Shown: piece after piece, positions 8,413 through 47,500 of the stretch
Layout of the letters: each line of letters starts with the position of its first letter
Numbering within the stretch: the stretch's first letter is position 1
Assembly (NCBI RefSeq): GCF_000150275.1
Contig: NW_002060954.1
Coordinates: forward strand, 1,116,001 to 1,180,000
Source: Trichoplax adhaerens
Lineage: Eukaryota > Animalia > Placozoa
Length of the DNA: 64,000 nucleotides
Direction: 5' to 3'
The notes under the pieces: model-generated
Seen by the model: only the letters and a program-made list of their open reading frames with translations
What the model was told of the DNA's origin: nothing
Database searches by the model: none
Translations under genes and position numbers: made by a program

Positions 8413-8777
8413 TACAGTACGTCTAGTACAGTACTGTACAGTACGTCCAAGCCTAGCGATAATAGTGTACAGTACCGTACCATACAGTGTACAGTACATA
8501 CCATACAGTACAGTACAACACTGAATACTGTAGAGGCCAGTTTGAGCAGTCGCAGTAGTGACAGTCCTACAGTACAGTGTAACTTGTTCTGCTAAAAGAA
8601 GTCCTGTACTGTACAGGTCTGGTGTACTGTACACTGTACACTGTACACTCAGTGCACAGTATGGATGGAGTCCTGGTGGTGTCAAGAGATTCAGGGTGTT
8701 TTGTACTGTACCGTGTACAGTATGTGTACTGTAGATGTTAGAAGACAGATTTGCAACTACTGTACTGTACATGTACA
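8413..8777. repeat. Degenerate TACAG/CTGTA pentamer array with TACAGTACTGTA and TGTACA palindromes, just upstream of the POMT2 start
   Basis: Directly visible, e.g. tacagtactgtacagtac, tacagtacagtac, gtactgtacactgtacactgtacac. Confidence 0.85.
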
Positions 8778-10171
8778 TAGTAAGTACATGATCTGTAAAA
8801 TTCAACCGACAGACAACACCTAAAACGTCTCAGAATATATATTTCAACACCCAAGAACTCTCTTTCTTCCACGATGTACTGCCATGATACTTTTGCAATA
8901 CTTTATGAGCCCTAGTTAGTTGAGTACACTTACTGTAGCTTTGAAGTCTTGCAATGAAATTCAAAGTCTGGCCGCACATATCGCTATCGCTACCTACTGT
9001 TTTACGAACACTACGCGTAGACGTCTAATGACTAATACAAGATAATCAGATTATTGTGCATTATATTGTACGTATTGATGCAGTACACACCTCTACTCTA
9101 TGCGTATTCTCGAGTTAATTACAATCACAGTGATTGGAAAACACTGAAAAAGACGCTCAGGAATTTGAATCAGGTCTATAGACCCATTAGCTAACTTCAA
9201 TTTTAAGATACATCATACATGTACGTATAGAAAATAAATTATCCACATTTTGCTTAAAAAACTGCCTACTGACTCAAGAATGAAATTAAAAAATTTTTCT
9301 TATCATTATTATACGAGTTGACTTTCAACTTTGAAGACTTTGATTTCTCGTTATAAGGAAATGAATGAATTTCATACTAAAAATTCGTGTACTGTAGCTC
9401 GAATAAAACTTCTTATCGGTCAATTCACAAAACGACATGTACATTGTACAGTAAGACTATGTCGTAAATGTGTACCTTTATATTATATAATTGCTAATAT
9501 GATTTGGAGCAGCTACTGCTATAAACTAATCAACTGGCTTTCCTTCATTACATGCGAATAATGCAATACAGGTTATCAAGGCAAACATTTATTTGGGTAT
9601 TCAAATATGTAGACACATTGGTAGATAGAGTTCAGTAGCAAGGAATACGTCGCTTATCCAAGAGGTGAACTGCATAGTACATACCGTACTGTACCGTATA
9701 CATTCGACGTGCGTAGATGATTAATCGTAAGTCAGAAAGGAGTGGTTGCTTCCAGCGAAGATCTTTCTTGCTGTTTTTTTTTTTGGCATTCCGTTCATTT
9801 GTGAACGGGCATACACGTAAACAGTTAGTAATACACTTTAATTTAGCTGCATAGTGAATAGGCTTTCAGGCCTAACAGACCGTACTACACACGTTCTTGT
9901 TGACCGAGTAGTACAGTAAGTAGAAGGTCTTCGTCTATAACATAAATGGTATAGCAAGCGTATTGGCCTTGTTACTTTTACTTTTAAGCATCCTGTGATT
10001 TGAAAACTTTCGTACAACCTTGATGTGACGTAAATAAGCTTCTACTTGGACTGGCGTTTCGATCCTGATCTGATCATGTGATGGATGGTGTGATTATGCT
10101 ACAATTTCTGCATTTATTTGTTTGTTTACTTATGCAAGTGCTCCACCTTTTTTTCTGAAGTCCTTATTACA

Positions 10172-10247
10172 TACAGTACTGTACTGTACTTATTAGATAC
10201 CCGTACTGCTGTACTGTACTGTACACTATCCAAGTGATGTACAGTAC
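10172..10247. repeat. TACAG/CTGTA array in the POMT2-SPTLC2 intergenic region
   Basis: tacagtactgtactgtact...gtactgtactgtacac...gtacagtact. Confidence 0.75.
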
Positions 10248-10854
10248 TTTAGTTTGTAGAATGAGAAAGTTATTAAAGTGATTCTGATTTATGTCGTAAA
10301 CAGAAAGGAAGCCTGGGAGTTTTTCCTTCCAAAGAAAGGTACCAGTGTCCAAGTAGACATTGTACGTACATTTACTATTCAACCGCTAAACACGGATTAC
10401 AACATGCAGTACTGTACATACATCTGCATAGCCTACGTGATAATATGATGACAACAGCGGAATTTACATATTCAAAGTTAAAGTTTATCTAATCAAGTTG
10501 GAGCAGACAGCATTATACCGCCTATGCCGCCTATACGACTACGATTTGTTTTTGTCGCATCATACAGGACGTAAAAAAATTTCGGCGGTTGCAATATGGC
10601 GTACAGTATAATAGCGAATTTTAGAAGAATAACGGTACACCATCAATCGCCAAAATAAGCGGTTAACAACATTTATTTGCAGAAAATAAACTGCACAAAC
10701 ATATTCATGAAGTCTTCGTCTATCTACACGTATAAAATTTCAAAGAATCAGGTCTAAAACCAAAGATATTTTTATTCACTGACTTGTCTGAAAAGAGAGG
10801 ACTCGTGCTGTACACTACAGATGTTGATCATATGGATCCCATTTACTCCGAGGC

Positions 10855-43837: not shown

Positions 43838-44242
43838 ACAGTACAGTACAGTACAGTATATCGTATTCGGAAAGCACACAAGCTGTAACTGTAGAACTTG
43901 GTTATAGCCTACGGGAGTAAGTACGGTACTGTTGACTACTAAATAGTCGAAGCTGCGGGGGTATTGAGTATCCTAGTAGTCCAAGTCGAGAATACTCAGA
44001 GTACAGTACTACAGTGGTAGGGTACTGTATGTGCCGTCTACAGTACAGTATACTGTACACTGTACAGTACAGTACTGTACATCTTTCGCTTTTATTTTGT
44101 GTACAGTAGAGAAAGAAAGAACGTTTAGTGTGCAATACAGTACTGTACAGCTCTGTTAAATCAATTATTGTAAGCTACTGTAGTGTACTGTAGCGTGTAC
44201 TGTTTCCTACTGTAGAGAACTCTCCAGCCTTGGTGGAAGTGC
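43838..44242. repeat. TACAG/CTGTA array upstream of the PRKD start
   Basis: tacagtacagtacagtacagta; tacagtacagtatactgtacactgtacagtacagtactgtaca. Confidence 0.85.
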
Positions 44243-44595
44243 TGTACTGTGTACAGTACGCACAGTCAACTGATAACTAGGCAAGACTGGGTATTTGATC
44301 ATCAGAAGAAAGTGAAACTCATTAACCACACCGGTCTTTAGACGAATTAGTATGCGGCAGACTTTACAATAGAGTAGTCGCTACACTATAGGTACATCCA
44401 ATAACCATTGAACTAATGCAGCTAACGGACAGATTCATGAATCATTTTTCGAACAAGTAGTATTGGAACTGTCTACTAAACGCAGTACATTCAAAAAACT
44501 ATAAGAAATACGCCGTTGAAGAGAGTAAAAGTATATCGTTTAAAATCGATAGGGAACGCTGGACAGGCTAGCGTCATTTTTAATCTAAATTAAAA

Positions 44596-47500
44596 ATGGC
44601 TAACAAGAATGAAGAAGAGTATGGGCTTACAACAGTATTGTTCCATTTTGGCTTTATCCGTCAAAAGAAAGTATTGGATGGAATCCAATACGTTAAATTA
44701 CTGGACATGGCTTGTGAATTATTAAATGAAAAGGTGAGATTTTAGACACAAATATATCCATGCTTATGATAGCATCAGTATCCTCTATAAACATATACCA
44801 GCGTATACCGTACAGTACTGTACAGCACTTGTGTAGATGTGCAGGCTAGAAACTGCTGAAAATGGACCATGATGAGATATCGATTTCACTGACAGGATAT
44901 CATTGAACTTAACTTAAAGTAATTAACTTTTAGTACATCACAGTAAGGAATTGAATCATGACTGAGCTGATCTCAATAGCAATCGTATAGTATCCAAAAA
45001 ATTGCATTATGCCGTACTAGTTAGAAGTTATACAGCACGTAAAGAGCAGTCTTTGTACTCGTACGTATGTGCTATCATGATGCTATATCCGCTGAGCACT
45101 GTAAAGAAAGATTTAAAGTTTAGGTTGAAGTATGGAGAAACAACAGCTTGGGTTAAAATGAAATTCGAAGATATTGCTTGTAACTCTAAATGCCTGAACT
45201 TGGAAGATGCTATACGTATTTAGTATGTGTGCGATAGTTTATTGTAAATAGATATCACTCCATAACAGAGAAAAAATGAAGACCTACTCTACTGTAATGT
45301 TAACCATTCTCTTTTCTTAATCTGCTAGGCCGAAGTTTAGTTTACAAAATATTTTAATTTATGGTTGCAGTATTGTATTGGGAACTACTTGAAACTGTTG
45401 ATAACTAATCCCTAACTAGAGTCTATCGACTGGATGTACGGTTCAGTAATGTGAGCAGTAGTCCTAGGAAATCCACATCGTGCCATACACTCAGGGTGAA
45501 AGTCATAGCTGAAATTCGGCGTACCCCCAAGCGACATACACTACGTAAAACAGTACTCGTTTGCAACTCCGTTATAATAATACTGCACTGGAGTTGATTG
45601 TGCCGTGAAAGTGGCCCATGACTGTACTATATCAAAAATAAATAAATAATAAAGCGCTACAGCAATAGCAGTACTATCGTGCTAGCGATATATTACATAT
45701 GATCCGCCGTAGGACCTAAAGTTTTAGGAACTTTGTGTGTTAGATCAAGAATCGAATGGATCCTTTGTGCTGTACTGTATTTTGGGCAAAGTTCGGTTCG
45801 TCGTCTATGCGTACTTTGAACTTCAGCTCCTTTCGTAAACCTCAAGATAACTGATAACTCTGAAATACAGATATCATACAGTACTGTACACGTAATACCA
45901 TGGTAATACCCATTGTTAATTTAAAAGATATTTCAGGCATTTATTTACAGTTAACTTCGTATGGATAAAAGAAAAAATTCTAGTTAACTCGAGTTCACAC
46001 ATACTGGAAATATAGTTTGACGTCAAATACTTTAATGTCTAAGTACAGTCTCGTTATGTGTGTGAAATTCTCTGATTGTAGTCCTACCGTAGTGGCTAAA
46101 TTCACCCTTTTGCCTGCATCAAAAGGGAGAAAATTTTTGTAAGAATTTTTTATTATTATTATTATTATTATTAGTTTATTGTAATGTACCTTACTGTACA
46201 CTACAGTCGTACAGTAAGGTATGGTTTAAACGACAATACCGTACAGTACTGTACTGTCAGAGTATGGGCCACGATCGATATTTTACAGTCAAGTTTAAAA
46301 AAAGACTTTTTTTGCTCTTGTACAGTACAGTACAGTACCAGATCGGGAACTTCTGCTACACTAGTACAGTACAACTGTGCATTGTGCAATACAGTACTAC
46401 CGCTGCAGTCCAAAAAAGTTCAGAAATAATAATCAATTAATTATTAATACTACTGTACTGGACTAGCTACTAAACTTTGTAAAATCCTTTTCTAATATAA
46501 GATGTACGAAACACCAGATACAAGTAAAACATGAAGGGGGGAAAACGCTGAAGCATACTGCACATTCGTTTTTTTCGAGCATCGCTTTTATTTCTGATAG
46601 TTGAATCCAGTACAAATGATTGTTCCCTTGGGCCTTCATTATAGATAGCATGCACTGTAGCACTTTGCTGTACGCAATACCATACTGTACAGTGTACTAG
46701 TACAGTATTTCCTGGACGTTGACTTCGTTCAAGGAAAGAATGACGAACAAGAACGTTGAATAAAATATAATTTTGGCGATAGTTCGTAAATCATTGAAAG
46801 GAGGCAATAATTTACGATGACTAGTCTAACGATAAATTGAATGCTCAGTAGCTAGAATGAATGATATTTTCTATTCAATCTTTGTGATAACAGTTCAGTC
46901 GACGGTATCACGTAAGTACGCACTTTACTAATTTTTCTGATTTGTAAGATGTACTGTACGAGAGAGAAGAACAGTAATCAGTACTGTACTGTATGTAAGG
47001 AGTCGATAGTATCATTATGCCCTTTTAAAAGTATGAATTTCTATGACATTCAGTGCCGAAATACCACATAGTATACAACATTGTAGCCTAAAACAGAAGA
47101 ACAAGAGTAGCTTCCATGGCTATTTGTACTGTCGTACCGTTAGTCCGTTATTCAGGCCTTTTCAGCCGGAGAAAAACTGAGGATCTCTTTGACATCAATA
47201 GCTAGTTTATGAATGCACTGTGCATTGTGAGTACTTTACAGTTTGTACACTACTTCATACATTACTGCGTGTACTTTCTTATTCAGCACTTGATTTTAAC
47301 TCCATGTTCGAACATTCAGCTTAAATCCTTATATTTATCCTATTTTGGGTTACACTTTACTCTAGCATACTGTAATATTAACTGCTACTTTAAAATAAGT
47401 AAACAAAAATAATCCGAAAAATGTACATTTTGCTCCAAGTGTAATAATGGCACTTCAAAAAAGGTGTATTCGAGTGGAACATATACTTGACGGCAATCTA

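What the first reader, a model, noticed from the sequence alone, without database searches (positions are those of the whole stretch)
8413..46706. Palindromic TACAG/CTGTA pentamer arrays mark gene 5' ends and divergent promoters
Seen: dense arrays of TACAG, CTGTA and TGTACA units, with the palindrome TACAGTACTGTA at strand switches. They lie ~120-480 bp upstream of POMT2, ~290-650 bp upstream of SPTLC2, between divergent PPP1R36 and ASPG (35.3-35.9 kb), and upstream of PRKD (43-44.2 kb). They are nearly absent from coding regions, 3' ends, convergent gaps, the globin locus and 56-64 kb; AKR has only a weak trace near 26.7 kb. Two pentamers equal about one helical turn, so units are phased on one face of the DNA, and the arrays are self-complementary. 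Inference: a lineage-specific promoter-defining code, acting like CpG islands or GAGA/insulator repeats, read by a multimeric DNA-binding protein or able to pair promoters into hubs. I recall reports of placozoan promoter-promoter chromatin hubs linked to a Mutator-transposon TIR motif, but cannot confirm this is the same motif.
Basis: partly seen in the sequence, partly recalled or inferred. Interest (0 to 1): 0.8.

Follow-up and report, generated by a model that had tools for sequence, protein, structure and literature searches.

The report
Known Trichoplax promoter pentamer arrays
The dense TACAG/CTGTA arrays are real and sit just upstream of a subset of genes. They are the (ACAGT)n promoter-associated repeat of the placozoan Trichoplax adhaerens, published in 2010 and since linked to chromatin architecture, so the pattern is known and only its mechanism is open.

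Summary
The window is Trichoplax adhaerens: an ORF is 100% identical to TRIADDRAFT_50776. TACAGTACTGTA with one mismatch or fewer occurs 63 times against 0.36 expected. Of 91 GTACWGTAC sites, 74 lie in three 5' intergenic zones that make up 14.7% of the window: POMT2<>SPTLC2, PPP1R36<>ASPG and upstream of PRKD. The globin<>AKR divergent gap has one.

This is already known. Wang et al. 2010 described (ACAGT)n as the dominant Trichoplax microsatellite, 54% within 1 kb upstream of genes. Kim et al. 2025 reported a loop-anchor motif at about a third of promoters. A 2026 deep-learning paper names repeating ACAGT as insulation-associated. This scan flagged the same arrays in at least seven other windows, and one follow-up reached the same verdict.

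New details:
- The arrays are best read as short (GTACW)n runs of 2-6 units with frequent A/T flips, unlike ordinary ACAGT microsatellites elsewhere.
- The 5-bp register is lost beyond about 25 bp.
- Arrays turn over by 5-bp indels between T. adhaerens and Trichoplax sp. H2.
- Only about 25 of many thousands of arrays carry a small inverted-repeat element, and true Mutator transposase genes are nearly absent.

No binding factor is known.

The parts
8413..8797 (.). Array upstream of the POMT2-like gene: 24 units in two clusters, 118-502 bp from the ATG at about 8295 on the minus strand
8140..8295 (-). First coding exon of the POMT-type gene. The rest of the gene runs leftwards to about 2.1 kb.
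   Evidence: The exon reads M...[12 protein letters not shown]. PMT profile positions 51-96 fall at 6225-6401 and 180-224 at 5381-5578. PMT_4TMC falls at 2778-3002. The first exon itself gave no database hit.
10172..10244 (.). Small array (7 units) in the middle of the POMT2<>SPTLC2 divergent gap
10808..11221 (.). Arrays upstream of SPTLC2: 16 units at 10808-10956 and a run at 11201-11221, 288-701 bp from the ATG
11509..11850 (+). First coding exon of the SPTLC2 orthologue
   Evidence: Residues 55-92 align to residues 57-93 of human serine palmitoyltransferase 2. Aminotran_1_2 exons lie at 13638-13985 and 14047-14364.
35287..35894 (.). Main array in the PPP1R36<>ASPG divergent gap: 44 units, 22 on each strand, with 20 GTACWGTAC sites
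35421..35467 (.). Remnant of a small dispersed inverted-repeat element inside the main array. It keeps the end word TAGACCATA and a right-hand block. The 205-bp core present in Trichoplax sp. H2 is missing here.
36178..37719 (.). Sparser units running up to the palindrome TACAGTACTGTA at 37708, 141 bp upstream of the ASPG ATG
37849..37971 (+). First coding exon of ASPG (asparaginase/lysophospholipase type)
   Evidence: Asparaginase profile positions 1-19 and 45-186 at 38706-39215. An ankyrin exon lies at 41130-41324.
30257..34543 (-). PPP1R36 orthologue, with its 5' end towards the main array
   Evidence: Coordinates were transferred from the Trichoplax sp. H2 gene call (PF14895, 552 aa) through a 99% identical alignment.
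42447..44256 (.). Arrays between the ASPG 3' end and the PKD-like gene: five clusters with 21 GTACWGTAC sites. The nearest lies 340-594 bp from the ATG.
44596..44742 (+). Probable first coding exon of the PKD-like kinase
   Evidence: The N-terminal pattern resembles the PKD ubiquitin-like domain by eye only. C1 domains lie at 50453-50605 and 50708-51058, and Pkinase at 54165-54443.
44811..46993 (.). Arrays inside the first 2.4 kb of the PKD-like gene: 11 GTACWGTAC sites, with clusters at 46194-46394 and 46655-46705
   Evidence: Whether they mark a second promoter, an intronic enhancer or an uncalled gene is not resolved.
22130..22327 (-). First exon of a globin gene whose 4.6-kb upstream gap has almost no units (contrast case)
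26913..27788 (+). Aldo-keto reductase TRIADDRAFT_50776, with one GTACWGTAC site (26714) in its upstream 1.5 kb (contrast case)

Best explanation
These are the promoter-associated (ACAGT)n repeats of Trichoplax adhaerens.

Structure. They are clusters a few hundred bp long, built from short runs of 2-6 units of the palindromic tetramer GTAC separated by one A or T. The form is (GTACW)n, with a minor 7-bp variant. TACAG and CTGTA 'strands' therefore alternate freely.

Location. They occupy the 5' intergenic DNA, and sometimes the first intron, of a subset of genes.

Most likely role (inferred, not shown). They act as a multivalent landing platform for a still unidentified placozoan DNA-binding protein. 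That protein would keep these promoters open and tether them to one another, producing the promoter hubs and insulation seen in published Micro-C maps.

Maintenance. The arrays are kept as arrays, not base by base. Units are gained, lost and flipped quickly while the cluster persists.
For: Shown here.
- Enrichment and clustering are extreme. Genome-wide there are 16,635 sites of GTACWGTACWGTAC against 7 for the reversed control.
- Of 91 strong sites, 74 fall in three 5' gaps. One falls in a fourth divergent gap of similar size, which belongs to a globin and an AKR gene.
- The spacer is A or T in 343 of 367 cases, against about 67% expected from composition. Adjacent spacers differ in 41 of 119 cases.
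- Among windows of five in-register units, 28 of 36 are strand-mixed in Trichoplax. In ACAGT arrays from 80 unrelated metagenome contigs only 26 of 480 are mixed. So this is not an ordinary slippage microsatellite.
- The array is present at the same place in Trichoplax sp. H2, with 40 units against 47 here. The array core has 6% substitutions and 2 indel events per 100 bp, five of the nine being exactly 5 bp. The flanks show about 1% and 0-0.1.

From the literature.
- 54% of ACAGT loci lie within 1 kb upstream of genes, enriched for ribosomal-protein and kinase genes (PMC2871265).
- A motif at loop anchors and at promoters of about 2,978 highly expressed genes is shared by four placozoan species (PMC12221973).
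- A network trained on those Micro-C maps finds repeating ACAGT associated with insulation (PMC12817080).
Against: - No binding protein is known, and none can be proposed from these data.
- No transcription start sites, accessibility data or contact data could be overlaid here.
- The letters of the published loop-anchor motif could not be read. One paper says the transposon-linked motif is a repeating ACGG.
- Fast unit turnover is also what a neutral repeat would show.
- The gene sample in the window is small, about seven starts.
- Some arrays lie in introns: 12.0-12.5 kb and 44.8-47.0 kb.
Confidence: 0.55

Rival explanations
1. Neutral by-product. The arrays are debris of DNA transposons whose inverted ends carry the motif, or a repeat that inserts and expands preferentially in open promoter DNA. 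They would have no role of their own.
For: - A dispersed element of about 200 bp, with at least 25 copies, sits inside arrays. Of 19 copies or fragments, 18 have three or more units within 300 bp. Units lie inside and outside its inverted arms of about 50 bp.
- A remnant of that element lies in this window's main array.
- Arrays evolve fast by unit indels.
- Kim et al. raise targeted integration as one option.
Against: - In 31 array regions totalling 38 kb, with the unit words masked, only one pair shares any other sequence.
- Element cores number in the tens while there are 16,635 triple-unit sites.
- The genome has only four MULE-domain matches, none with units nearby. One of them is an intact IS256-like gene of bacterial type.
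- A neutral microsatellite should look like the pure long runs seen elsewhere. These arrays are short and strand-mixed, with the spacer held to A/T.
- Arrays are absent from one of the four 5' gaps, so location in an intergenic gap alone does not explain them.
Confidence: 0.25
2. DNA-structure element. The alternating purine-pyrimidine, TA/CA-rich, self-complementary sequence itself excludes or positions nucleosomes, or extrudes cruciforms under transcriptional supercoiling. No sequence-specific reader would be needed.
For: As a single strand, 35287-35520 folds at -61.8 kcal/mol against -37.8 +/- 3.3 for shuffles, z = -7.4. The window holds 589 exact 12-bp inverted pairs within 3 kb of each other. 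The repeat is rich in flexible TA and CA steps, which can be read directly from the sequence.
Against: - Mirror-image spacers are not preferentially complementary, 30 against 48, so perfect hairpins are not favoured.
- There is no register beyond 25 bp and so no consistent rotational setting.
- The strict conservation of GTAC and of A/T at the spacer looks like base-specific reading.
Confidence: 0.12
3. Direct pairing. Self-complementary arrays at different promoters base-pair with each other and so form hubs.
For: Only the degenerate self-complementarity of (GTACW)n.
Against: Duplex DNA does not pair in trans without strand opening. The spacers do not match between arrays. No known hub works this way (established knowledge; not tested here).
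Confidence: 0.02

Closest known systems
(ACAGT)n microsatellite of Trichoplax adhaerens (Wang et al., Biol Direct 2010, PMC2871265)
   Same: Same unit, since TACAG is a rotation of ACAGT, and same genome. Loci are the same short length: 15-40 bp in their table and 2-6 units here. The upstream-of-gene position matches, and a binding-site role is suggested there too.
   Different: That paper treats it as a one-strand pentanucleotide microsatellite. Here the runs prove strand-mixed, with the spacer held to A/T. They are grouped into clusters a few hundred bp long and differ from ACAGT microsatellites of other organisms.
Loop-anchor / group-1 promoter motif tied to 'Mutator' inverted ends in placozoans (Kim et al., Nature 2025, PMC12221973)
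   Same: A lineage-specific motif at promoters of roughly a third of genes, mostly housekeeping ones, present in four placozoan species and found in inverted ends of annotated DNA transposons. Here units lie in the inverted arms of a small element family.
   Different: The motif's letters are only in a figure, so identity is unproven. A later paper equates the transposon motif with repeating ACGG. The transposon calls came from EDTA, a structure-based pipeline. Homology finds four MULE-domain matches here and six MuDR fragments in 2010.
Repeating ACAGT motif associated with insulation in T. adhaerens (Chimaera network, NAR 2026, PMC12817080)
   Same: Same repeat, named explicitly, linked by in-silico mutagenesis to a 3D-genome feature.
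   Different: It is a model prediction from contact maps. It gives no anatomy, no gene-level placement and no protein.
Clustered promoter or tether motifs read by dedicated proteins: (GA)n/GAGA factor and DRE/M1BP in Drosophila, and the GC-rich motif read by CTEP1/CTEP2 in ctenophores
   Same: Short motifs, often repeated, at promoters of broadly expressed genes, with roles in accessibility, insulation or looping (the ctenophore case is).
   Different: Different sequence, and no reader is known here. The resemblance is functional analogy only.
Ordinary (ACAGT)n microsatellites in other organisms (80 metagenome contigs)
   Same: Same pentamer in register.
   Different: There the runs reach 42 units and 95% of five-unit windows are pure. 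In Trichoplax the runs are 6 units or fewer in the 264-kb sample and 68-78% are mixed.

Membership tests
Trichoplax (ACAGT)n promoter-associated repeat (Wang 2010) | Tandem ACAGT units in T. adhaerens DNA | tested here: met
   An ORF is 100% identical to TRIADDRAFT_50776. The 5-bp GTAC spacing is seen 367 times in 264 kb.
Trichoplax (ACAGT)n promoter-associated repeat (Wang 2010) | Very high genome-wide abundance | tested here: met
   There are 16,635 triple-unit sites against 7 for the control, and 2,688 five-unit sites against 0.
Trichoplax (ACAGT)n promoter-associated repeat (Wang 2010) | Mostly within about 1 kb upstream of genes | tested here: met
   72 of 91 strong sites lie within 1.5 kb upstream of seven gene starts, which cover 16% of the window.
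Loop-anchor motif of placozoan promoter hubs (Kim 2025) | Same sequence as the published motif logo | not testable with these tools
   The text holds no motif letters. A secondary source is ambiguous.
Loop-anchor motif of placozoan promoter hubs (Kim 2025) | Overlaps Micro-C loop anchors and ATAC/H3K4me3 peaks | not testable with these tools
Loop-anchor motif of placozoan promoter hubs (Kim 2025) | Present at only a subset (about a third) of promoters, of broadly expressed genes | tested here: inconclusive
   Five starts have arrays and two (globin, AKR) do not. The direction is right but the sample is small and there are no expression data.
Loop-anchor motif of placozoan promoter hubs (Kim 2025) | Motif contained in inverted ends of a DNA transposon family | tested here: inconclusive
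   One small element family has units inside and beside its inverted arms. Whether it is the family annotated as Mutator is unknown.
Mutator/MULE DNA transposon | MULE-type transposase in or near the elements | tested here: not met
   The genome has four PF10551 matches, none with GTACWGTAC nearby. One is an IS256-like gene of bacterial type.
Mutator/MULE DNA transposon | Copies share internal sequence | tested here: not met
   Across 31 array regions with units masked, only one shared pair was found.
Mutator/MULE DNA transposon | Target-site duplication of 9-11 bp | tested here: inconclusive
   No duplication is seen at the minimal copy L042. Arrays alone yield eight inverted pairs with 9-bp flanking direct repeats, so the criterion can be met by chance in arrays.
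Ordinary slippage microsatellite | Long runs of one unit on one strand | tested here: not met
   Runs are 6 units or fewer. 78% of five-unit windows are strand-mixed, against 5% in other organisms.
Ordinary slippage microsatellite | Unit-length indels between close relatives | tested here: met
   Five of the nine indel events in the array core between H1 and H2 are exactly 5 bp.

The most novel reading that the evidence does not exclude
The Trichoplax arrays are not a microsatellite in the usual sense. They would be a selected, dyad-symmetric (GTACW)n code: short strand-mixed runs with the spacer held to A/T, read by an unknown placozoan-specific factor. On this reading the published 'Mutator' association is largely a by-product of structure-based annotation calling inverted array pairs as inverted ends. 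The only real mobile partner would be a small family of tens of copies that carries or targets the units. Linking the 2010 microsatellite and the 2025 loop-anchor motif as one object would then give a concrete oligo for finding the first placozoan architectural protein.
Probability: 0.35. Interest if true: 0.55.

Novelty: already known. Interest (0 to 1): 0.3.

Why it matters
Placozoans lack CTCF-type loops, yet they show thousands of promoter-promoter contacts. A short repeat that marks exactly those promoters is the obvious handle for finding the protein that builds them, and for asking how 3D gene regulation arose in early animals.

The pattern itself is published, so the value here is in sharpening it. 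The working unit is GTACWGTAC rather than a one-strand pentamer. The arrays have no long-range helical phasing. They turn over quickly while persisting. The transposon link rests on very few real elements. These points tell an experimenter what bait and what mutant control to use, and which published annotation to re-examine.

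Tried and rejected
- The window's own genome is withheld from the look-up of encoding contigs. Gene starts were therefore set exon by exon with Pfam and PDB searches and from the Trichoplax sp. 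H2 annotation.
- The first exons of the POMT-type and PKD-like genes gave no database hit. Their starts rest on downstream domain order and on reading the sequence.
- I sought conservation in a distant placozoan. Two SPTLC2 exon-1 contigs at 61% identity (L046, L047) end 86-114 bp upstream of the ATG and show nothing. POMT2 exon 1 found no homologue.
- Rfam finds no family in the dispersed element. Only sub-threshold hairpin-like miRNA matches to arrays appeared.
- GACGGACTGAAA, a candidate for the 'ACGG' motif, occurs only 17 times genome-wide, so it cannot be a general promoter motif.
- A 19-mer block seen beside some arrays occurs about 58 times.
- The genes of this window are not in the stored, truncated part of Wang's table of ACAGT loci.
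- Hairpin selection was tested through spacer complementarity and rejected.
- Helical phasing across arrays was tested and rejected.

Full report
ORGANISM AND OBSERVATION

The window is G000:C1403:1116001-1180000 of a 105.6-Mb assembly in 1,414 contigs, with 32.5% G+C. Its 292-aa aldo-keto reductase ORF is 100% identical to TRIADDRAFT_50776 of Trichoplax adhaerens.

TACAG occurs 210 times and CTGTA 206 times, against 74 and 81 expected from dinucleotide content. The 12-mer TACAGTACTGTA with one mismatch or fewer occurs 63 times against 0.36 in shuffles. The units are strongly clustered.

WHAT THE REPEAT IS

Successive GTAC tetramers are most often 5 bp apart: 367 cases in 264 kb made up of the window plus 20 other stretches of the contig. 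The next most common spacing is 7 bp, with 81 cases. The single spacer base is A 174, T 169, C 13 and G 11.

The array is therefore (GTACW)n.

Runs are short, 2-6 GTAC in register, and adjacent spacers differ in 41 of 119 cases. The best-scoring 8-mers are GTACAGTA/TACTGTAC and GTACTGTA/TACAGTAC.

Genome-wide there are 16,635 sites of GTACWGTACWGTAC against 7 for the reversed control. There are 2,688 sites with five units against 0 for the control.

WHERE THE ARRAYS LIE

Gene starts were fixed exon by exon.
- A POMT-type gene runs leftwards from an ATG at about 8295.
- SPTLC2 starts at 11509.
- Globin, AKR and PPP1R36 were placed by transferring the Trichoplax sp. H2 gene table through a 99% identical alignment.
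- ASPG starts at 37849.
- A PKD-like kinase starts at about 44596.

Of the 91 GTACWGTAC sites, 74 lie in three 5' gaps: 8296-11508, 34544-37848 and 41722-44595. Together these make up 14.7% of the window. Eleven more lie in the first 2.4 kb of the PKD-like gene, and six lie elsewhere.

The globin<>AKR divergent gap is 4.6 kb and has one site. Convergent gaps and gene bodies have 0-0.8 sites per kb.

So the arrays mark some 5' ends and not intergenic DNA in general.

Register. For GTAC-GTAC distances of 24 bp or less, 50% are multiples of 5. Beyond 25 bp the fraction is 19-23% against 20% expected. There is no phasing across an array.

Self-complementarity. A 234-nt stretch folds with z = -7.4 against shuffles. 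However, mirror-image spacers are complementary in only 30 of 78 cases. Perfect hairpins are therefore not favoured. The complementarity is a property of the degenerate unit.

COMPARISON WITH A CLOSE RELATIVE

The Trichoplax sp. H2 locus (L026) is 99% identical over 20 kb. Identity drops to 93%, with 114 gap columns, across the gap that holds the arrays.

In the array core there are 6.0% substitutions and 2.0 indel events per 100 bp, and five of the nine events are exactly 5 bp. The flanks show 0.8-1.0% and 0-0.1.

The cluster persists, with 47 units here and 40 in H2. Individual units do not persist.

COMPARISON WITH ACAGT REPEATS ELSEWHERE

In the 80 contigs fetched, runs reach 42 units and 454 of 480 five-unit windows are pure.

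In the Trichoplax sample, 28 of 36 such windows are strand-mixed. Of the first 50 listed genome-wide, 34 are mixed. The Trichoplax arrays are therefore not ordinary slippage microsatellites.

THE TRANSPOSON LINK

With the unit words masked, 31 array regions (38 kb) share almost nothing with each other. Only one pair matched.

The genome has four MULE-domain matches, none with units nearby. One is an intact IS256-like gene of bacterial type.

One real link did appear. H2 has 205 bp inside the main array that the window lacks, and this is a dispersed repeat with at least 25 matches at 80-91% identity.
- Of 19 copies or fragments, 18 have three or more units within 300 bp.
- A minimal copy (L042) shows inverted arms of about 50 bp that begin with TAGACCATA.
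- Units lie both inside these arms and beyond them.
- The window keeps a remnant at 35421-35467.

Wang et al. found a single MITE family of about 20 copies, which may be this one.

Tens of copies set against thousands of arrays mean the element cannot account for the arrays in general.

Kim et al. annotated transposons with EDTA. From my own knowledge, EDTA classifies inverted-end elements by structure. In this window the arrays alone give 589 exact 12-bp inverted pairs, eight of them with 9-bp flanking direct repeats. A structural caller therefore has material to label arrays as Mutator-like. This last step is inference, not shown.

WHAT IS KNOWN

- Wang et al. 2010 reported ACAGT as 78% of pentanucleotide repeats. 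They found 54% within 1 kb and 85% within 5 kb upstream of genes, enrichment for translation and kinase genes, and suggested a binding-site role.
- Kim et al. 2025 reported promoter hubs. They found a motif at loop anchors and at 2,978 group-1 promoters, shared by four placozoan species and contained in Mutator inverted ends. They offered either a domesticated architectural-protein site or targeted integration. Their text has no motif letters and does not mention the microsatellite.
- The Chimaera paper (2026) found repeating ACGG and ACAGT for T. adhaerens insulation. It assigned the transposon-linked motif of Kim et al. to ACGG.

In my sample GACGGA is enriched in masked array zones, 14 against 1.5. 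This is driven by a few loci, and GACGGACTGAAA occurs only 17 times genome-wide. By abundance and gene class the (GTACW)n arrays fit the widespread loop-anchor motif better. I put that identity at about 75%, unproven.

This scan had already flagged the same arrays in at least seven other windows of this genome. One follow-up reached the same 'known' verdict and pointed to the 2010 paper, which I checked.

VERDICT

The mechanism is still untested. The most likely reading is a multivalent protein-binding platform at a subset of promoters. The main rival is a neutral transposon or microsatellite by-product.

Noticed in passing
L026:19351-19555 (Trichoplax sp. H2); window 35421-35467; copies L027-L045: A dispersed element of about 200 bp with at least 25 matches at 80-91% identity, with inverted arms of about 50 bp beginning TAGACCATA. 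It is nearly always embedded in pentamer arrays. It is present in H2 and internally deleted in the window. Four copies lie in tandem at C1412:7399499-7400276. It is possibly the single MITE family of about 20 copies mentioned in 2010.
   Followed up: partly
window 35612-35690; L007:1000-1470: A second word, GACGGA/ACGGAC, is enriched in array zones after masking, 14 against 1.5. It forms a near-palindrome at 35665-35677 and recurs in a tandem repeat of about 150 bp in L007. It may be the 'ACGG' motif named in the 2026 paper.
   Followed up: partly
window 9012, 25812, 60107 and 20 other sites in L001-L020: The palindrome TACGCGTA is over-represented: 23 sites in 264 kb, about six times expectation. 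Ten of the 23 lie within 300 bp of a GTACWGTAC site, against 18.5% expected. It may be a second promoter word.
   Followed up: partly
G000:C1329:10098-11213 (L025): An intact 401-codon IS256-type transposase (Transposase_mut, E = 2.8e-114) in DNA of 28.5% G+C. It looks bacterial, from an endosymbiont or a contaminant, rather than a placozoan Mutator element.
   Followed up: no
G000 small contigs such as C100, C103, C112, C200, C498: Many unplaced contigs of about 1 kb are packed with the arrays, which suggests the repeats break the assembly.
   Followed up: no
window 44811-46993: Arrays inside the first 2.4 kb of the PKD-like gene, with no convincing coding ORF nearby. They could mark an alternative promoter, an intronic enhancer or an uncalled transcript.
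   Followed up: no
window 22130-22327 (-): The first exon of the globin starts MGCSSSK, a myristoylation/palmitoylation-type N-terminus. Its promoter gap lacks arrays.
   Followed up: no
L048-L127 (metagenome contigs): Long pure (ACAGT)n microsatellites of up to 42 units occur in many unrelated environmental contigs. The pentamer itself is therefore not placozoan-specific. Only its short, mixed, promoter-clustered form is.
   Followed up: partly
L046, L047: Contigs from another placozoan-like organism (61% identity in SPTLC2 exon 1), one from a sequencing run and one from a marine metagenome. Both stop about 100 bp upstream of the ATG.
   Followed up: no
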